From contig JAMWBK010000002.1 in the NCBI GenBank assembly GCA_029953675.1, forward strand, positions 806,001-870,000: a stretch of 64,000 bases of DNA, given 5' to 3'. The notes beneath the pieces are model-generated. The model saw only the letters and a list, made by a program, of their open reading frames with translations. It was not told where the DNA came from and searched no databases. This document shows positions 23,151-47,319 of the stretch, piece after piece. Position numbers and translations under genes: made by a program. The DNA comes from Rhodosorus marinus CCMP1338. Lineage: Eukaryota; Plantae; Rhodophyta. How positions within the stretch are numbered: position 1 is the stretch's first letter; each line of letters begins with the position of its first letter.

Positions 23151-24779
23151 CTAAACGTAGCTTGGCAGGCCCTTCGGCAGAACCGCAGCGATTAGTGGGG
23201 ATTTGCCATGCAGAAGACCTCCTAGAACGTTTCCCAGCCCAAGTCTGTATGCCAATCGAGGCAGGGCAAGCAGAGCGGACGCCAGTTTAGGAGCAACTGC
23301 TCGCGTGTAAATTGAGGCAACTATCCCGTTAACAACAATCTTTCCTTCCATTGTGTGAGGGTTGTAGAGACCTTGCTTCTTGACAAACTTGACCGCACTT
23401 ATCTCTGTCTCGGAGCCGTCAGCTAGAACTACCCTGTCTCCAACCTTCGCGTTCATGGCAATCATCAGCTTGCCGTTCACTGGAAGGTAGTGGGTATGGC
23501 TCAGCTCTATTTCGGCGCCCCCCGCTTCCAGTCGGACGAAAGTCGTGAAAGCAGATTCGTCCTTATGTCCCCACGAGAACACGGTGCTGTATCGGCCACC
23601 CCCAACGTGCAGGGAATCTCCAATCTGCACCTGGTCAATCCGCTTCGTCGTTCCGTCAGCAGTTTCAACCATGGAGTCAGCGGGGAAGCAGGTATTAAGA
23701 TCTGCTGGGTCTCCGCTTTCAGAACCCTCATCATTTCCGTCACTGTCATCATCTCCGGTACCGTCATCATCCCCATTGCCGTCATCATCTCCAGTACCAT
23801 CATCGTCTCCAGTGCCGTCGTCATCCCCGCTGTCGTCATCATCTCCAGTACCGTCATCATCTCCAGTACCGTCATCATCTTCACTGCCGTCATCATCCCC
23901 ATTGCCGTCATCATCCCCATTGCCGTCATCATCCCCATTGCCGTCGTCATCCAAATTGCCGTCATCATCATCATCGTCGTCTCCATCTCCAATAATTCCT
24001 CTACATTGCCTTTTGAGGGAACGCTGAGCCTCGTCCAAATGGTCTTCGTCCACAAGTGGACAGCTCGATATGAACTCCTTGGCGCAGTTAATGAAATCGA
24101 GAGCTTCGTTGCAGCACTCTTCAAGACCGTCGTCCGAGTTGCAGACCGCAGCGGCACCGCATTTCTCGAAGAGCAGAAGAGAGCATTCCTCGTCCTCGTC
24201 ATCTCCATCTCCATCTCCGAGAGAGTCCTCACACTGTTCTCGGATATTTTCGCCAAGTCTTTGCAAATAATCCTCATCCACAAGCGGACATTCCGCGGCG
24301 AACTCCTCGGCACACTCGATGAAATCGGCGGCTGATTTGCAGCACTCGACAAGATTGTCACGCGGACTGCAAATTGCGGCTGCACCGCACTTCTCAAGGA
24401 GCTTAGCGGAACAATCATCGTCATTGTCATCTCCATCGCCGTCACCATCGTCCCCGAGTTCGCGGCAGTCCTCCTGCAAATCTTCTAGAAGTCCCTCGTA
24501 CGCCTCCAATCCAGGTACGTCACAAGACTCGATGAAGTCGAGAACGCATCGAGACCATATGTTCACAGTCCTGCAGCATTCCTCGATCGAATCGCTTCTC
24601 GGATCACAAGGCTGGATCATTCCGCACTTCAGAATCTCATTCTGGTCGCAATTTAGCTGATCCTCATTTTGGCGAGCTGATTTCGGGACGTCAAGATGGA
24701 CTGCGCTAGCACAGCACAAAACCCCAACCACTACCAAAAATACTAAACCACTCCTCATCCTGCTCATTAGGTCTTTCAT
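23151..24779 (-). CDS. Secreted Hog/Hint-domain autoprocessing protein: signal peptide, 3 Cys-rich modules, Asp/Gly repeat linker, Hint domain, SRR-like tail
   Basis: Signal peptide GLVFLVVVGVLCCASA. Hint start T|CFPADSMV, KRIDQVQIGD, ELSHTHYL, GLYNPHTMEGKIVVNGIVASIY. Intronless 542-aa ORF. Confidence 0.92.
   Translation of the reverse strand: MKDLMSRMRSGLVFLVVVGVLCCASAVHLDVPKSARQNEDQLNCDQNEILKCGMIQPCDPRSDSIEECCRTVNIWSRCVLDFIESCDVPGLEAYEGLLEDLQEDCRELGDDGDGDGDDNDDDCSAKLLEKCGAAAICSPRDNLVECCKSAADFIECAEEFAAECPLVDEDYLQRLGENIREQCEDSLGDGDGDDEDEECSLLLFEKCGAAAVCNSDDGLEECCNEALDFINCAKEFISSCPLVDEDHLDEAQRSLKRQCRGIIGDGDDDDDDDGNLDDDGNGDDDGNGDDDGNGDDDGSEDDDGTGDDDGTGDDDDSGDDDGTGDDDGTGDDDGNGDDDGTGDDDSDGNDEGSESGDPADLNTCFPADSMVETADGTTKRIDQVQIGDSLHVGGGRYSTVFSWGHKDESAFTTFVRLEAGGAEIELSHTHYLPVNGKLMIAMNAKVGDRVVLADGSETEISAVKFVKKQGLYNPHTMEGKIVVNGIVASIYTRAVAPKLASALLALPRLAYRLGLGNVLGGLLHGKSPLIAAVLPKGLPSYV
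23755..23975 (-). repeat. 18-bp coding tandem repeat encoding ~13 DDDG(N/T/S)G units
   Basis: Repeated CCATTGCCGTCATCATCC-like units on the + strand. Confidence 0.95.
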
Positions 24780-37234: not shown

Positions 37235-38161
37235 TCAGTCACCTAATTCTCCGGTGTGATTTTCCACCTCAACATAGAGTTCTTCATCGATCTGTGGAAT
37301 GATGCTTTGCATTGTACAGCTCAACACTTGTCTGGAATTGAACCCAAACCCTGTCTGCATATCCCTCGTGATGATCGGAATTTTGCCTTTCACTCGCATA
37401 ATTTTGCCACGAGCCAGCACCAGCCTCCCAAGGGAAAAAAGGACACCGAGATGTGATCCATACGCCAGCTGGACATCCAGCAACCTCAAAGAGTCACTCA
37501 AAGGAAGCACGCACATTCCCAGAGAGGAGATGTTGGGGAAAGCATATGCCTGCGGGATGAGCTTGAACTCGCTGAAACGAGTGTACAGCTCGGGGTCTAG
37601 CTGTCTGAGTAGTTTGTTCATAATGTTACATCCCCGATGTACACCGATGTACTTGAAAACATAGTCTGGAATTCTCTCCGTTAGGAAGACATCGAAAGAT
37701 AGGAAGGCCTCGGGTTCTGTCATGAGGAACAGGAACGGCGCTGCTAGAACGCTCATGCTCTGCAAGTACGTTTCAGGTTCGTTTCCACGCTCATGGACCA
37801 GGGCGTTGAGCAGACGCACAAGCATTTCCCGGGGAACACGAGACGTGTACTCTTCATGCTTTGAAAACGTCCGAGATACATCGATGGCGATCTTTTGATA
37901 GTCAACAGATGGGCCCCTGCTCACCAGCTCCTTGTAGTGGTCAACGTTAACCTCTCCAACCCCTAAAAGCGCTTTCCAAACCGTCCCACGCAAGGAGCCC
38001 CGCCCACAGCTACCAGAAAGGCTCGCGGAATCCGGTAGGCCTTGGAATAAAACCAGCTCTTTCAGCTTGCTCAGCCTATCATTCACATCCTCTTCAACAG
38101 CACCATCCCCGCGTCGAAGTAACCTCTCATACTCAGACATTAGAACGTCCTCACCGCCCAT
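37235..38161 (-). CDS. BUB2: Bub2/Cdc16-like TBC-domain GTPase-activating protein, paralog 1
   Basis: LRGTVWKALLG, R-finger IAIDVSRT, RLLNA, Q-finger YLQSMSVLAAPFL, GVHRG, DPELY, YAFP, LAYGSHL. Intronless. Confidence 0.85.
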   Translation of the reverse strand: MGGEDVLMSEYERLLRRGDGAVEEDVNDRLSKLKELVLFQGLPDSASLSGSCGRGSLRGTVWKALLGVGEVNVDHYKELVSRGPSVDYQKIAIDVSRTFSKHEEYTSRVPREMLVRLLNALVHERGNEPETYLQSMSVLAAPFLFLMTEPEAFLSFDVFLTERIPDYVFKYIGVHRGCNIMNKLLRQLDPELYTRFSEFKLIPQAYAFPNISSLGMCVLPLSDSLRLLDVQLAYGSHLGVLFSLGRLVLARGKIMRVKGKIPIITRDMQTGFGFNSRQVLSCTMQSIIPQIDEELYVEVENHTGELGD

Positions 38162-39995: not shown

Positions 39996-40925
39996 TTACA
40001 GTCCCTTCTCTCCGGTATGTTGTTCCACTTGTTTGTACAGATCGTCATCGATTTCGGGTATAATTCTGGTCAGCGTATAGCTTAACACCTGCGCTGCTGA
40101 GAAACCGAATCCGTTCTCCATTTCCCTCGTCGTGATCGGCAATTTACCTCGAACTTGCATAATCTTCTCGCTCGCTAGCAGGAGCCTTCCGAGGGAAAAA
40201 AGCACGCCTAGGTGTGATCCATAAGCTAGCTGAACGTCCAGAAGCTGAATGGAATCATTCAAAGGTGATACGCACATTCCGAGGGAGGATATATTGGGGA
40301 ACGCGTACATCTGCGGAGTCAACTTGAACTCCAAAAAACGCTTATAGAGGGAAGGGTCTAGTAACTGCAAACACCTCTCCAGCAGATCGCAACCACGGTG
40401 AACGCCAACATATTTGTAAACGTATTCAGGTATTCTTTCCCGCAGGAAGATCTGAAATGAAAGAAATGCTTCAGGTTCGGGCATGAGAAACAAAAAGGGA
40501 GCGGCAAGCACGCTCATGCTCTGCACGTAAGTTCCTTTCGTGTTTCCTCTGTGGTGCACAAAAGCGTTAAGAAGTCGCACGAGCATTTCTCGCGGTACTC
40601 GAGACGTATATTCCTCGTGCTTAGAAAATGTTCTATACACATCATTGAATATCTTCTGGTAGTCATTCGATGCGCCCTTGTCCACTAGCTGCAAATATTC
40701 ATCGACGTTAACGTCCGCGACACCTAACAACGCCTTCCATACGGTCCCTCTCAAAGATCCTCTACCGCAAAATCCACCGTCGCTCGCGCTATCGGGCAAG
40801 CCTTCCCACAAAATCAGCTCCTTCAATTTCTCCAGTCGAGCATTGGCCTCGCCGTCAACGTTCTTACCATTCCCCCGCCCAAGCAATCCTTCATATTTAA
40901 ACTTCAGCTTTTCATCCCGTCCCAT
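39996..40925 (-). CDS. BUB2: Bub2/Cdc16-like TBC-domain GTPase-activating protein, paralog 2
   Basis: Collinear with paralog 1: IFNDVYRT, YVQSMSVLAAPFL, YAFPNISSLGMCV. ATG at 40925 (MGRDEK). Confidence 0.85.
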   Translation of the reverse strand: MGRDEKLKFKYEGLLGRGNGKNVDGEANARLEKLKELILWEGLPDSASDGGFCGRGSLRGTVWKALLGVADVNVDEYLQLVDKGASNDYQKIFNDVYRTFSKHEEYTSRVPREMLVRLLNAFVHHRGNTKGTYVQSMSVLAAPFLFLMPEPEAFLSFQIFLRERIPEYVYKYVGVHRGCDLLERCLQLLDPSLYKRFLEFKLTPQMYAFPNISSLGMCVSPLNDSIQLLDVQLAYGSHLGVLFSLGRLLLASEKIMQVRGKLPITTREMENGFGFSAAQVLSYTLTRIIPEIDDDLYKQVEQHTGEKGL

Positions 40926-41790
40926 CAGGCAGGTTAAAAATTCACCTACCACCCACCCACCTCCCGCCCCGCCTTCAAGACCACCACGATCTTCCTTCAA
41001 AATCCAACTGAGCACACGACCAAAAACAAGAGGTCTCAAAGAAAGCCAACCTTGACCCTTACCCCACTTCAAGCTCTAACCCCAATGTCCTCCTCCCACT
41101 CCCCACCCCCCCACCCCCCTCACTCTAACGAAAATGTCAAAGAGCCGCCTGCCTCTAAAAAGACTCAAACAGCTTCCCGTCAACCAAGGCAGGAAGATCC
41201 CCCTGCTTGACTCAATAAATCTCCTCAACACAAAATACGATCATAAAAATACACATCCGAACCCTGCCCCCTCCTCCCCTCAGCCCCCCACCCCCACCCC
41301 TGCTTCTCACTCAGTAACATCCAATTGCCTACATCAATCATCCCAATCAACAAACGATCTTTCCGTTCTCTTCCTCCACATAGAAGTTACTTCGCATTCC
41401 AAATCCTTGGCCCCCTCCCCATCCCCTTCCCCCTCCCCCCGCTCTCCTCATTGCCTTCTCCAGGAGATGATCATCCGTTCCTTGGCAACCTCCTCAGGAC
41501 GACGTGCATGTCTTGTTTCGCTCTGGAGACGAAGCCACCGACAATGATCTTCCTTTCCTATTCTTCCCAAATCCTATTCTCGTGACGTCGCAACATCTTC
41601 TTTGCGTCAAGTTCGTCTTCTTGTTCCATTGCTACTCCCTCACCACCGCAGCAGACTCTGTTGAAGTCTTTCTTATCCTTTTTGGTTACAAATGGAACGG
41701 GCTTTGCCCAGATCGGCCGCCTGGGTTTGGCTGCGAGTGGGTTTGCCATCTTCTCCAACAGCCCTCTGGTGCTGCTGCCTGTTTGAAGAT

Positions 41791-43459: not shown

Positions 43460-43839
43460 TGATTTGTCGGGGTTCACGTGGAGTTAAAAGAGTTCTGAAG
43501 GATGTTTGAATGGCTTTCTTGGGACCGCGGAGGACCTATTTGCGTAGCTTAAACGGGATTAGCGAAGGCGGTGAGCAGTTTTGTTTTGAGAGGGGTGATT
43601 TGAGTAGCTTGGTTGATGAAGAGGTTAATGTCAACTCTGCAGAATGGGAAATGAACGACTGCTACGACTCCTCGTGCAGTTGGTAAGACGGACGGATGGG
43701 GACCTTTGAGCTGAGTCTTGATTGTGTTGAAAATAGTGTAAAGCCGGAGCGGCAGTATGAGATTTTTTGTTCGGAGCAGAGTCTGTAATTAGTAGACTTG
43801 ATCTTGGAGATGTCAAAGGGCGTCCGGGAGAAACGAAGA

Positions 43840-46800
43840 ATGGGGTTTGTGGTCGGCTGTGGATGGGATGGACGACCCATGGCTGGATCGCTGTGCTTGG
43901 AAAGGGGTTGGAATCGATGGAGAAGAAGGTCTGGGAGCGTTGCGATGGCTACGAATAATGAGAGTTTTGGCGATGACCCAAGCTCAAAGGGTTCGGAGAA
44001 GTTTCGTAAGCTGCGGCAGCTTTTTGAGGAGAATACGAGAATTGCGGATGTGATCGGTGAAAAGGTGGGTAGGCGTGATCTGAGCTGAGCTCTGCCTCCT
44101 CAACTCACATGAAGCTTTTTGGTGCGCTAAAGGATAAAGTTCGCTTTTGTCGGCGTTGTTGTTTCATGTTTTAGGTTGACCTTCGTCAAGCTGGATCACA
44201 CCTGGTCGGTTGCTGCCCCTTCCACGAGGAAAAGACCCCTTCTTTTACCGTTTACGAGGACACGAACAGCTATTTCTGCTTCGGTTGTCGTGAGCGAGGT
44301 ACAAGAGACGCGCAAGAAGGCATATCGCAGGCGCTTTTGCGTTATGCTTTTGATTTTGACCCTAGACGCATCTTCCCGCTCTACGTGTGCTGCCAGGAGA
44401 TATTATAAGCTTCGTTATGGAAACGCAAAACTTGAACTTTAGACAGGCTGTCATCAGCATCGCAAAAAGGTTCAACTTGGAGTCAAATTTACATGAGCTG
44501 TCATTCTTCGAGTCCGAATCCAAGGAGCAGCAGGTTGCTCGAGCTGAAGCGACTGCGAAAATTGGTGAGCCAAGTTCTTTCCAATTCCGACAGAATGAAG
44601 GAGGATCCGGAAGCAGTCCTCTCCATAGTCAGTGAGAAAGCTCAGCGCTCAACCTCGATTCGATCCGTTTTCATATCCAGATGAAATGTACAGAATCATG
44701 GAAAATTCTACGGAGTTTTACTTTACTTACCTTCGGAGCTCATCAGGAGGCGCAACGAAGGCGTTAGAGTATTTGAACAGTCGAGGATTTGATGAGGATA
44801 CCCTCCGACGGTTCAGAATAGGTGCCTCTCCAGATGCGGCGTAAGCTATAGCGATAAAGAGATGCAGGGGCTTGTTTACCTTCTAATGGATGCGAGGGGG
44901 GTTTTAGTCTGAGCGGATTCAACTCTTTTCTACGCAACGAACAGAGGGCAGCTGATAAAGTACCTGGAAAAGAAGGGCTTTGGGCCCAATTCAATCGCTG
45001 AATCAGGCGTAGCAATACGATCAAATAAGAACGAGCTTGTTGATGCCATGCGCGGCAGGGTCGTAGTTCCGATAATGAACGCTAGGGGTCACGTTATAGG
45101 TAGGAAACCTGGACTGTTGAGGAAGAGAGCAATTCCTTGAGGCTCGTTTTCCATCTAAAAGGATCTGTTTCTGCTTTACCCTCCCTGCATGCCGCTCTTC
45201 ACAACAGGGTTTGGAGGCAGAAAGCTTACCGAGGACGCCTGGGGCCCAAAGTACTTGAACACCAAGGAAACGCTAATATTTAAGAAGGGATCGACTCTGT
45301 ATGGAGAGAATTTCGTTCCGAAACCGCAGCCACCCGCCACTGCGGTGATTGTAGAAGGATACTTTGACGTTATTCAGTACGTTCTGTCAGACGATTTATC
45401 CCTAAACGGTACAGCAAATATCGCTGCCGGTGGTGCTCCTATTGCCTTCGATGCTCAGAAAAGCTCCACGTGGTTATGTCCAAAAGGCTGCACAAGCACA
45501 AAATGTTTTGGGCGGTATCATCCTTGGGTACGGGCCTGACAATTGAACAGCTGCGGCACGCATCGAGGCACAGTCGAGAGCGGGCAGTTACGGTCAATAT
45601 GGACAACGACGAAGCCGGGTTCAGAGCTGTTTTAAGGTGTGGCGGGTTTCAAGTTTAGGCGACTTTTGAGTGCTTTTTATTTCCGTTTGGCACTGCTGTC
45701 TGTCTCACCCAGATTGTAGAATATCTATGCCCAGACTACCATTGACCGTTTTTCCTGTTGCTTCTCGCTCAGGGCTTGTCAGTCAATATTTCCAACGGCT
45801 ATGAGGGAAGGGATCGACGTCAGGCTTGCGTTTTTGCCTCCAGCAGTGAAGGACGCGGACAGCTTCCTCGACGGGAAGTCAATCTCAGACTACGTCGACC
45901 AGGTTTGTGATTGAAACTTGAGTTTGAGTTTTGCGAAATTTTGAGCTTGAGGAACTGAGGAAAGGAATTGACCGCGTGCACCACAGGTCTTATCCCCTTC
46001 TCAGAGTTGGTTCCTTTGGTACTCCAAAGTATTGGCGAATGATGTAAATAGTATCGAAGGCTTGAGCAGTCTTCTCCACCGGCTTGGTGGGTTGCTGGCA
46101 GACAGCATTCCAGCAAGGTTCGTTGTACCAGCAACTTGAGGAATGCAGGACTCTCCCTTACCCATCTCCTATTTCCTCCGTTGCTGAAGGCTCTTCTTTC
46201 CCCCCCCTTTCCTTCGTTTCGCGGCTGTTCAGGAAGGAGGGCACAGGATTCGTTGCGAAGGAGTACGCAAGAACAATAGCGAAGGAGTTGGCGGACATTT
46301 TTGAGAGGCCGGAGTATGAAGAGGAGACCTGCAGGGAGATTTTACGAAGGTAGGCATAACCTTGGCAGAGGATAGCCACCTAGCAAGACATTCACGTTTT
46401 AATGAATCTGAAATTGAGCTTGAACTTGTCACCACATGTTAATGAATATCTGCAGTTTCTGGCTCAAGCGCACGGGTGGCCGTTTTGATCCTGAGCAAGG
46501 ACGAGAGTCAAAGTGGGATCGTAGGAAAGGTACAAGTTGCTCGACCCTGTCCTGCGGTTTGTTGGAGACGGTTGTTGTCTAATCCAAACAATATGCTTAG
46601 GAGAGTCTGAAGCGAAGTCTATCCGAAAAAAGTCGATAGGCACATTGCCGGGCTGGGAAAACGCCAACACATCTTTCATTCAGCGAGCGGAGCTGACGCT
46701 GTTGCGAGTTCTCGTTCAGGACCTGGATATTCGGCGGAATTGTATGGAGATTGTCGATAGACGAGGAATTAAGTGAGTGCCTGTGAATACGGAAGATCTT

Positions 46801-47319
46801 GGCGACATCAACGGCTGAAGGTTTCTGCCGGTCCTATAAATATTTTTTGCCCCAGATTTGCCGAAGAGGAGCACGTCCGGGTCTTCGAATGGCTGAAGGA
46901 AAACGCAGGAGATGGTGGACCTGATGAACTCTTCGAAGAGATGTCCTACGACAGATCTGTCAAAGACTTGCACCGCTACTTTTTCGAGTTCAGCCCGGCA
47001 GTGGACCTTGAGCGCGAGGTGACAAAGTCGGTACGTTGCTGCTGGCACGCTCCCCCATATGGCCACTTTTCGCCTGAAAGGAATCTTCTTCTACATTCTA
47101 CGATCGAAACGGAAGCTGAACGCTATGGAAATTCGTCGAAGTATGAACATTATATCAGCCGTTGATGTGATTGTAGAAGAACAGATGAAGGTCGACCAAA
47201 TGGAGCCAAGAGTCGCAACGTACGTCGAGGAGCTCCTCTCCCGTCGCAAGGAGCTTCAGATGCGGATTGGCACTCTCCACGATGAGCTAAGAAACTTGGA
47301 CCAGATTTCGGACGTTTGA
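43840..47319 (+). CDS. dnaG: Bacterial-type DNA primase DnaG, nucleus-encoded, probably plastid-targeted, intron-rich
   Basis: Transit-like MGFVVGCGW...; CHC2 finger CCPFHEEKTPSF...YFCFGC; GDIISFVM; RVVVPI...G.VIGFGGR; PKYLNTKET..FKKG..LYG; Toprim VEGYFDV, SLGTGLT, MDNDEAG. Confidence 0.93.

What the first reader, a model, noticed from the sequence alone, without database searches (positions are those of the whole stretch)
23990..24660. Three copies of an unrecognised 8-cysteine helical module as the payload of a Hedgehog-like precursor
Each ~63-aa module follows C-x7/8-C-x5-C-x8/9-CC-x8-C-x7-C-x18-C (for example CSAKLLEKCGAAAICSPRDNLVECCKSAADFIECAEEFAAECPLVDEDYLQRLGENIREQC), separated by D/G spacers. 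It recalls plant 8CM/prolamin folds but lacks the CxC motif, and I cannot assign it to a known family. With a signal peptide and a C-terminal Hint domain, the architecture parallels Hedgehog: a secreted domain released and possibly C-terminally modified by autoprocessing. This is a candidate undescribed extracellular signalling, adhesion or matrix system.
Basis: partly seen in the sequence, partly recalled or inferred. Interest (0 to 1): 0.75.

Follow-up and report, generated by a model that had tools for sequence, protein, structure and literature searches.

The report
Red-algal Hedgehog-like precursor, new cysteine module
A gene of the unicellular red alga Rhodosorus marinus encodes a secreted protein with three copies of a previously uncatalogued 8-cysteine helical module, a very acidic linker and a Hedgehog-type self-cleaving end; this protein architecture was already described in red algae, and only the cargo module is new.

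Summary
Window 23151-24779 (- strand) is one 542-codon ORF. It encodes a signal peptide, three mutually homologous ~63-aa modules (C-x7-C-x5-C-x8/9-CC-x8-C-x7-C-x18-C), a 103-aa Asp/Gly linker, and a Hint module with a short sterol/adduct-recognition tail.

The Hint part is a good Hedgehog-type autoprocessing domain. Its Pfam PF01079 score is 76.6 bits. Its top structural matches are Drosophila Hh-C. It has Cys364, S427xxH430, and His405 at the general-base position. It lacks the motif-J cysteine.

The module matches no Pfam family and no PDB fold. A lead to the RGM N-terminal domain failed a profile-profile test. The only relatives found are one Hint-less Rhodosorus protein, a doubtful single-module Hog protein, and a distant two-module protein with a GPI-like tail.

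The window comes from the R. marinus CCMP1338 genome. Its public annotation starts the gene at Met54, so it loses the signal peptide.

Hog proteins with lineage-specific N-terminal cargo were reported in red algae in 2008. This is therefore a new member of a known kind carrying an undescribed, narrowly distributed cargo domain.

The likely mechanism is self-cleavage in the ER at Thr363|Cys364, releasing an acidic, disulfide-rich surface or matrix protein that may be sterol-esterified. Processing, adduct and function are all untested.

The parts
23151..24779 (-). Complete single-exon ORF of the Hog precursor (542 aa + stop). The first in-frame ATG lies 7 codons after an upstream stop.
   Evidence: The public annotation calls only aa 54-542.
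24702..24779 (-). Signal peptide, aa 1-26 (MKDLMSRMRSGLVFLVVVGVLCCASA | VH)
   Evidence: Read by eye, plus hydropathy. It is about 80% conserved in the transcript-derived Rhodosorus paralogue P0005.
24462..24650 (-). 8-Cys module 1 (aa 44-106)
24414..24461 (-). Acidic D/G spacer 1 (aa 107-122)
24228..24413 (-). 8-Cys module 2 (aa 123-184). The AF2 model has three helices.
24186..24227 (-). Acidic D/G/E spacer 2 (aa 185-198)
24000..24185 (-). 8-Cys module 3 (aa 199-260)
23691..23999 (-). Poly-acidic linker, aa 261-363 (52 D+E, 27 G, no K/R). It holds about 11 hexapeptides DDDG[NT]G, encoded by an 18-nt tandem repeat (23745-23969, 12.5 copies). It ends ...GDPADLNT363.
23688..23690 (-). Codon of Cys364, the predicted nucleophile at the Thr363|Cys364 scissile bond
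   Evidence: Alignment to Drosophila Hh-C Cys258. The residue is invariant in alignment A3.
23295..23690 (-). Hint core (aa 364-495) with H405 (position of Drosophila D303), S427xxH430 (the TxxH motif) and I490 (position of motif-J Cys400/C143)
23154..23294 (-). C-terminal SRR/ARR-like tail (aa 496-542). Its first helix, APKLASALLALPRLAYRL, aligns with Drosophila SRR LAHWGLAPMRLL.

Best explanation
This is a Hedgehog-related 'Hog' precursor of the red alga Rhodosorus marinus. The proposed mechanism runs in five steps.

(1) The N-terminal signal peptide takes the protein into the ER and is removed after Ala26.

(2) The three 8-Cys modules fold as small three-helix, disulfide-locked domains with four disulfides each. 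One of these is probably C3-C4.

(3) The Hint domain performs an N-to-S acyl shift at Thr363-Cys364, assisted by S427/H430. His405 occupies the general-base position.

(4) The thioester is resolved by a nucleophile presented by the short SRR/ARR tail. This is most likely a 3-beta-hydroxysterol, and cholesterol is the main red-algal sterol. The alternative nucleophile is water.

(5) This releases a 337-aa, extremely acidic cargo (pI about 4) made of three modules on a roughly 100-residue Asp/Gly stalk. The stalk is probably Ca2+-binding. If the cargo is sterol-esterified, it stays tethered to the outer membrane leaflet or the cell coat.

Shown here: the domain architecture, the conservation of the catalytic residues, the Hint fold, and the repeat homology. 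Inferred: secretion, cleavage, the identity of the adduct, calcium binding, and surface or matrix function.
For: Hint domain:
- Pfam PF01079 scores 76.6 bits against a cutoff of 29.7.
- PDB sequence hits are to Drosophila Hh-C.
- The AF2 model has pLDDT >90 over the core.
- Foldseek top hits are 6tyy and 1at0 (Hh-C), E = 3e-12 and 6e-12, target TM 0.83, ahead of inteins.

Catalytic positions:
- C364, S427xxH430 and H405 are conserved in the three nearest relatives.
- The Drosophila D303H swap keeps activity and widens sterol tolerance (PMC9163320).

Other features:
- The first SRR helix aligns with Drosophila SRR and is conserved in relatives.
- There is no C-extein, since the ORF ends 47 aa after the Hint core. 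This is therefore cleavage, not splicing.
- Signal peptide and module 1 are conserved in a transcript-derived Rhodosorus protein.
- The modules are under purifying selection.
- Cholesterol is the major sterol of red algae (PMC5104453).
- The same layout (signal peptide, cargo, disordered acidic or S/T/P linker, CFP-Hint) appears in 23 other protist loci and in Buerglin 2008.
- A distant module relative carries a GPI-like tail instead of a Hint. This fits a lipid-tethered surface module.
Against: - No expression or protein evidence exists for this gene. No orthologue of the Hint part was found in the R. marinus transcriptome-derived proteins.
- The public annotation uses Met54, which gives no signal peptide.
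- The motif-J cysteine (Hh C143/C400) is Ile490 here. In animal Hh this cysteine forms a branched intermediate and is required in cells (PMC12054796).
- The residue at position -1 is Thr, not Gly.
- Only the first SRR helix is recognisably conserved, and the tail is modelled at low confidence.
- No non-metazoan Hog has been shown to transfer a sterol, as far as the papers read here say.
- No Patched- or Dispatched-like gene was seen in the window among the ORFs scanned.
- The calcium-binding idea rests only on a motif pattern.
Confidence: 0.55

Rival explanations
1. The Hint domain works only as a self-cleaving, hydrolytic release device, or uses a non-sterol nucleophile. The acidic cysteine-rich cargo is then a soluble secreted component of the mucilage or cell coat, or a Ca2+ buffer, with no lipid anchor.
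For: The motif-J Cys is absent (Ile490) and the SRR-like tail is short and only partly conserved. Buerglin called this region ARR precisely because the adduct is unknown outside Hh. The cargo is extremely acidic and has no hydrophobic segment.
Against: The SRR first helix is well conserved across all relatives, which suggests it is needed. A residue capable of acting as general base (His405) is retained. A simple release function would not need a conserved 47-aa tail.
Confidence: 0.3
2. The gene is not functional as read. Either it is a silent or decaying locus, or the true product is the annotated 489-aa protein from Met54, which would be cytosolic and unprocessed.
For: The public annotation starts at Met54. 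No orthologous transcript-derived protein was found for the Hint part.
Against: The 549-codon open frame sits in DNA where other unannotated frames rarely exceed 150-200 codons. A start at Met54 would cut module 1 after its second cysteine and leave an odd set of 6 Cys. The region upstream of Met54, including the signal peptide and Cys1-2, is conserved in the transcript-derived P0005. All catalytic residues are intact. dN/dS between modules 2 and 3 is about 0.27.
Confidence: 0.07
3. The module is a divergent member of the RGM N-terminal-domain type of three-helix, disulfide-locked ligand-binding domain, and acts as a binding module for a secreted partner.
For: The distant relative P0006 scores 22.8 bits on Pfam RGM_N, against a cutoff of 24.2. 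The core spacing C-x8-C-x7-C, followed by a loop and a third helix, is shared with the RGMs. RGM_ND is a three-helix bundle with three disulfides (PMC7354924).
Against: hhalign of the Rhodosorus module profile against RGMA/B/C gives probability 0.5%. P0006 against RGM gives only 7%. The window modules have no RGM_N hit. In Foldseek, RGMB_ND appears only at E = 8.2 with TM 0.41.
Confidence: 0.08

Closest known systems
Hog (Hint + SRR/ARR) proteins of red algae and other protists (Buerglin 2008, BMC Genomics 9:127)
   Same: It shares the signal peptide, a lineage-specific N-terminal region, and a Hedgehog-type Hint with a C-terminal recognition tail. The motif-J cysteine is replaced, as reported for red algae and mosses. 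The N-terminal region has no similarity outside the lineage.
   Different: The cargo here is a threefold repeat of a defined 8-Cys module plus a long poly-Asp/Gly stalk. At the motif-J position it has Ile rather than Ser, Thr or Asp. It comes from a stylonematophycean unicell that was not sampled in 2008.
Animal Hedgehog (Hedge + Hog)
   Same: It shares the self-cleaving C-terminal domain, with Foldseek TM 0.83 to Drosophila Hh-C. It also shares the Cys nucleophile, the (S/T)xxH motif, the first SRR helix and the secretory precursor logic.
   Different: There is no Hedge/HH_signal domain. His replaces the Asp general base. The C143-equivalent cysteine is missing. Thr rather than Gly sits at -1. 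The tail is shorter. No pathway partners were found nearby.
Nematode Hedgehog-related families (warthog, groundhog, quahog, ground-like)
   Same: Cysteine-rich lineage-specific cargo domains occur both fused to a Hog domain and alone. Here the window gene is the fused form, and the Hint-less Rhodosorus protein P0005 is the free form.
   Different: There is no sequence relationship and no Pfam hit. The Rhodosorus family is tiny. P0005 may also be an incomplete transcript.
RGM N-terminal domain (PF06535)
   Same: Both are small secreted three-helix, disulfide-locked domains with a C-x8-C-x7-C core.
   Different: Profile-profile comparison gives no support (0.5%). The module has 8 Cys rather than 6, and its N-terminal spacing differs.
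Plant 8-cysteine-motif (nsLTP/2S albumin/prolamin) and fungal CFEM domains
   Same: All have eight cysteines in a small helical secreted domain. The plant motif also includes a CC pair.
   Different: The module has no CxC and its spacing differs. It matches none of these Pfam families.

Membership tests
Hog / Hedgehog-related autoprocessing proteins | Hint module of the Hedgehog type (Pfam PF01079) above the curated cutoff | tested here: met
   76.6 bits against a cutoff of 29.7, aa 353-513. Foldseek top hits are Hh-C 6tyy and 1at0.
Hog / Hedgehog-related autoprocessing proteins | Cys as first residue of the Hint module (motif A, 'CF') | tested here: met
   C364-F365-P366 aligns with Drosophila C258-F. 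The residues are invariant in A3.
Hog / Hedgehog-related autoprocessing proteins | Motif B, TxxH | tested here: met
   S427-H-T-H430 aligns with Drosophila T326-P-A-H329. Relatives have T or S at this position.
Hog / Hedgehog-related autoprocessing proteins | General base at the position of Drosophila D303 (D46) | tested here: inconclusive
   The position holds His405, not Asp. The engineered D303H is active with broader sterol tolerance, so the residue is plausibly functional. This was not shown for this protein.
Hog / Hedgehog-related autoprocessing proteins | Motif J cysteine (Drosophila C400 / C143) | tested here: not met
   The position holds Ile490. This agrees with Buerglin's note that red-algal and moss Hogs have replaced this Cys. 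It is typical of animal Hh but not defining for protist Hogs.
Hog / Hedgehog-related autoprocessing proteins | C-terminal SRR/ARR extension after the Hint core, and no C-extein | tested here: met
   A 47-aa tail follows the core. Its first helix aligns to Drosophila SRR and is conserved in relatives. The stop codon comes directly after it. The second half is modelled at low confidence.
Hog / Hedgehog-related autoprocessing proteins | N-terminal secretion signal | tested here: inconclusive
   A typical n/h/c-region with ASA|V is read by eye, and hydropathy agrees. No signal-peptide predictor was available. The public gene model omits this region.
Hog / Hedgehog-related autoprocessing proteins | Autoproteolysis with transfer of an adduct to the cargo C-terminus | not testable with these tools
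   This needs biochemistry.
Hedgehog proper | N-terminal Hedge / HH_signal domain (PF01085) | tested here: not met
   There is no hit at E <= 1.
RGM N-terminal domain (PF06535) | Profile match to RGM_N | tested here: not met
   The window modules give no hit. hhalign of A4 against RGMA/B/C gives probability 0.5%.
Plant 8CM (nsLTP / prolamin superfamily) | C...C...CC...CxC...C...C pattern and a Pfam match | tested here: not met
   The CxC is absent (sequence). There is no Pfam hit.
Inteins | C-terminal Asn plus a downstream extein nucleophile, giving splicing | tested here: not met
   The ORF ends ...LPSYV with no extein. Intein-type Pfam families score only E = 0.03-0.13.

The most novel reading that the evidence does not exclude
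Protein sterylation operates in a unicellular red alga. On this reading, this Hog domain (natural His general base, no branched-intermediate cysteine) esterifies cholesterol to Thr363. It thereby anchors a new family of disulfide-locked three-helix modules on a Ca2+-binding poly-Asp stalk at the cell surface. Hint-less paralogues would serve as free forms. That would be a non-animal counterpart of lipid-tethered Hedgehog-type ligands, with a mechanistically simpler autoprocessing route.
Probability: 0.25. Interest if true: 0.65.

Novelty: new member of a known kind. Interest (0 to 1): 0.35.

Why it matters
Whether Hog domains outside animals attach sterols is still open, and so is what their cargo does.

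This protein is a convenient test case for four reasons:
- It is a single exon.
- Its cleavage site is clear.
- It naturally carries the His general base that was engineered in Drosophila.
- It naturally lacks the C143-type cysteine, in an organism whose main sterol is probably cholesterol.

It could therefore show whether the branched intermediate is dispensable in ancestral-type Hogs.

The cargo module is a compact, undescribed disulfide-rich helical domain that may deserve a family entry. Its distribution seen here is very narrow, so its wider importance is probably limited.

There is also a practical result. The public gene model is N-terminally truncated and hides the signal peptide.

Tried and rejected
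1. A word-index homology search with the three-module region found nothing. The same search with a 7-sequence module alignment also found nothing.

2. An exhaustive HMM search of 1.84 billion representatives with the module profile gave three hits.
   - One is spurious (P0004, an unrelated repeat protein).
   - One is real (P0005, Rhodosorus).
   - One is distant (P0006).
   - The window's own annotated protein never appeared in these searches. Close orthologues clustered with it could therefore have been hidden.

3. RGM_N lead. I rebuilt RGMA/B/C N-domains from PDB alignments and ran hhalign. The lead is rejected for the window modules.

4. Foldseek of the module model against the PDB gave nothing below E = 3.7. 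Short helical bundles are weak queries for this method.

5. P0001 is the closest Hint relative (53% identity) and also has 8 Cys with CC-x8-C in its cargo. Even so, hhalign against the module profile gives only 5%. It is kept as pattern-level similarity only.

6. I scanned 23 metagenomic Hog loci for the module and found none. One of the two DNA patterns used for that scan required the His, so the universal His in those loci is partly selection bias.

7. I looked for a second copy or a paralogue in the window and found none.

8. I looked for Patched-, Dispatched- or acyltransferase-like neighbours among 27 ORFs and found none.

9. Reading the protein as an intein was rejected, because there is no extein.

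Full report
**What is in the sequence**

Window 23151-24779 on the minus strand is a single open frame of 542 codons. Reading from the N-terminus it contains the following (coordinates):
- A typical secretion signal, aa 1-26. It has K2/R7/R9, then GLVFLVVVGVLCC, then ASA|VH.
- Three modules of 62-63 aa: aa 44-106, 123-184 and 199-260.
- D/G-rich spacers separating the modules.
- A 103-aa linker, aa 261-363, with 52 acidic residues, 27 glycines and no basic residue.
- A Hint domain starting at Cys364, followed by a 47-aa tail.

Each module has eight cysteines spaced C-x7-C-x5-C-x8/9-CC-x8-C-x7-C-x18-C. The modules are clearly homologous to each other, with BLASTP E = 7e-12, 6e-10 and 3.5e-28. 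Modules 2 and 3 have diverged to 61% DNA identity, with dN about 0.42 and dS about 1.6. The triplication is therefore old and selectively maintained.

The linker is encoded by an 18-nt tandem repeat of 12.5 copies at 84% matches. It reads as about eleven hexapeptides DDDG[NT]G, which fit the first half of the EF-hand/DxDxDG calcium-loop pattern. That fit is a pattern match only.

The released cargo (aa 27-363) would have pI about 4, 116 acidic residues against 19 basic, 24 cysteines and no N-glycosylation sequon.

**Where it comes from**

A neighbouring ORF, a RabGAP at 37235-38161, is present letter for letter in NCBI assembly GCA_029953675.1, contig JAMWBK010000002.1. It is 95% identical to a Rhodosorus marinus MMETSP protein. 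That accession is the nuclear genome of R. marinus CCMP1338, a unicellular stylonematophycean red alga (PMC10250338).

The window holds ordinary nuclear genes:
- a single-exon four-domain voltage-gated channel
- a WD40 protein
- ribosomal protein uL30
- two RabGAPs
- an RRM protein
- an XPG nuclease
- a C2H2 protein
- a DnaG-type primase
- retroelement debris

None of these is an obvious partner of the Hog gene.

The public annotation calls the gene as a 489-aa product beginning at Met54, with no Pfam hit on record. That model removes the signal peptide and cuts module 1 after its second cysteine. The longer model is supported by P0005, the transcript-derived R. marinus protein A0A7S0G9Q5. It aligns from Met5 through the signal peptide and the whole of module 1 (47% identity, E = 9e-28).

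**The C-terminal half**

Several lines of evidence identify it as a Hedgehog-type autoprocessing domain:
- It scores 76.6 bits on Pfam Hint PF01079, against a cutoff of 29.7.
- It aligns to Drosophila Hh-C.
- An AlphaFold2 model built with three relatives has pLDDT above 90 over the beta-core.
- That model's best PDB matches are Hh-C 6tyy and 1at0 (E = 3e-12 and 6e-12, target TM 0.83). These rank ahead of inteins, BIL and Vint domains.

Mapping the alignment to Drosophila numbering gives:

| Drosophila residue | Residue here | Note |
|---|---|---|
| C258 (nucleophile) | Cys364 | conserved |
| TxxH (T326, H329) | S427, H430 | conservative Ser for Thr |
| D303 (general base) | His405 | Asp replaced by His |
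| C400 (C143, motif J) | Ile490 | cysteine lost |
| SRR first helix LAHWGLAPMRLL | LASALLALPRLAY | aligns |

Two of these points need comment. The engineered D303H enzyme is active and accepts more sterols (PMC9163320), so His405 is plausibly functional. C143 forms a branched thioester intermediate and is required in mammalian cells (PMC12054796). Its replacement here matches what Buerglin reported for red-algal and moss Hogs.

The ORF stops 47 residues after the Hint core. This is therefore a cleaving domain and not a splicing one.

**The cargo module**

The module matches nothing catalogued:
- There are no Pfam hits for the region or for single modules, even at E <= 10.
- There is no PDB sequence match.
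- The AF2 model of module 2 (pLDDT 78; helices at positions 4-10, 18-42 and 48-62) finds no fold match better than E = 3.7.

An exhaustive profile search of 1.84 billion cluster representatives returned only two credible relatives:
- P0005 is from Rhodosorus. It has the same signal peptide, one module and no Hint.
- P0006 comes from an AT-rich organism in a marine metatranscriptome. It has two 6-Cys modules and a GPI-signal-like hydrophobic tail.

P0006 aligns to the Rhodosorus module profile with hhalign probability 89.5%, and to modules 2-3 by tblastn with E = 5e-7. It lacks exactly the third and fourth cysteines. This suggests that C3 and C4 form one of the four disulfides.

P0006 scores just under the Pfam cutoff for the RGM N-terminal domain (22.8 v 24.2 bits). 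That domain is a three-helix bundle with three disulfides and the same C-x8-C-x7-C core. I tested this lead directly. The Rhodosorus module profile against RGMA/B/C gives probability 0.5%, and P0006 against RGM gives 7%. Membership of RGM_N is not supported.

P0001 is the closest Hint relative (53% identity) and comes from a JGI transcript. Its cargo also has eight cysteines, including CC-x8-C. The profile comparison is nevertheless not significant.

**How common is the architecture**

Buerglin 2008 described Hog proteins in red algae (Chondrus, Porphyra, Gracilaria, Griffithsia), mosses, alveolates, cryptophytes, jakobids and others. Several of these have signal peptides and lineage-specific, sometimes cysteine-containing, upstream regions with no matches elsewhere.

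A scan of metagenome contigs with the Hint alignment returned 23 further loci. Their reading frames show the same plan: a signal-like N-terminus, a variable cargo, a disordered S/T/P-rich or acidic D/G/E linker, then x|CFP[AG]. None of them carries the 8-Cys module.

The 'system' is therefore a known kind. What is new is the cargo, and its distribution appears very narrow.

**Most likely mechanism**

The steps below are the inference; the architecture and residues are what is shown.
1. The precursor enters the ER, loses its signal peptide, and forms twelve disulfides.
2. Cys364 attacks the Thr363 carbonyl to give a thioester.
3. A nucleophile held by the tail resolves the thioester and frees the acidic cargo.

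I rate self-cleavage as likely (about 0.8). All first-step residues are present and the domain is conserved.

I rate a sterol adduct at about even odds.
- For it: the SRR first helix is conserved, a competent general-base residue is retained, and red algae have cholesterol as their main sterol (PMC5104453).
- Against it: the C143-type cysteine is lost, the tail is short and only partly conserved, and Thr sits at -1.

If the cargo is esterified, it would sit on the outer membrane leaflet on a long, probably calcium-loaded polyanionic stalk. The GPI-like tail on the distant relative P0006 fits a membrane-tethered role for this kind of module. The biological function (adhesion, coat organisation, signalling) cannot be decided from sequence.

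**Caveats**

- There is no expression evidence for this gene. No orthologue of its Hint part turned up among transcriptome-derived Rhodosorus proteins.
- The search tools never returned the window's own annotated protein, so close orthologues clustered with it may have been hidden.
- The signal peptide was judged by eye.
- The module model has only moderate confidence, and I could not inspect its coordinates for disulfide geometry.

**Verdict**

This is a new member of the known Hog protein class, with an undescribed and narrowly distributed 8-Cys cargo domain. Interest is moderate to low (0.35). It would rise if sterol transfer by this naturally His-bearing, C143-less Hog were demonstrated.

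Noticed in passing
window 24621-24779 (-): The public annotation of GCA_029953675.1 starts this gene at Met54 (489 aa). That drops the signal peptide and the first two cysteines of module 1. No Pfam domain is on record for that product.
   Followed up: yes
window 15923-20779 (-): A single-exon 1618-aa four-domain voltage-gated cation channel lies 2.4 kb downstream of the Hog gene. It has Ion_trans x4, a PKD_channel-like segment and a weak GPHH match.
   Followed up: partly
window 2249-2956 (-) and 7021-8171 (-): These are retroelement remnants. The first has zf-CCHC, Pol beta-barrel and SH3-like pieces. The second is a reverse transcriptase split across two frames.
   Followed up: partly
window 37235-38161 (-) and 39996-41072 (-): Two adjacent RabGAP-TBC paralogues. 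The first served to identify the genome: it is an exact match in NCBI and 95% identical to the R. marinus MMETSP0011 protein.
   Followed up: partly
window ~43810-47319 (+) (L026 843-4352): An annotated 727-aa nuclear gene has bacterial DnaG-type primase domains (Zn_ribbon_DnaG, DNAG_N, Toprim). It is presumably organelle-targeted.
   Followed up: no
P0006 / L025 50-619: A marine metatranscriptome protein from an AT-rich organism has two 6-Cys versions of the module and a GPI-signal-like tail. It sits just under the Pfam cutoff for RGM_N. It lacks exactly C3 and C4 of the 8-Cys pattern.
   Followed up: partly
P0003; L017-L019 (upstream of the CFPADA site): Unrelated GC-rich protist Hog genes also place an acidic D/G/E low-complexity linker directly before the Hint cysteine. 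Most other loci use S/T/P-rich linkers. A disordered stalk before the cleavage site looks like a general feature of these proteins.
   Followed up: partly
window 23745-23969 (-): An 18-nt tandem repeat (12.5 copies, 84% matches) encodes the DDDG[NT]G hexapeptides. It is a likely length-variable locus, and a likely cause of broken short-read transcript assemblies.
   Followed up: no
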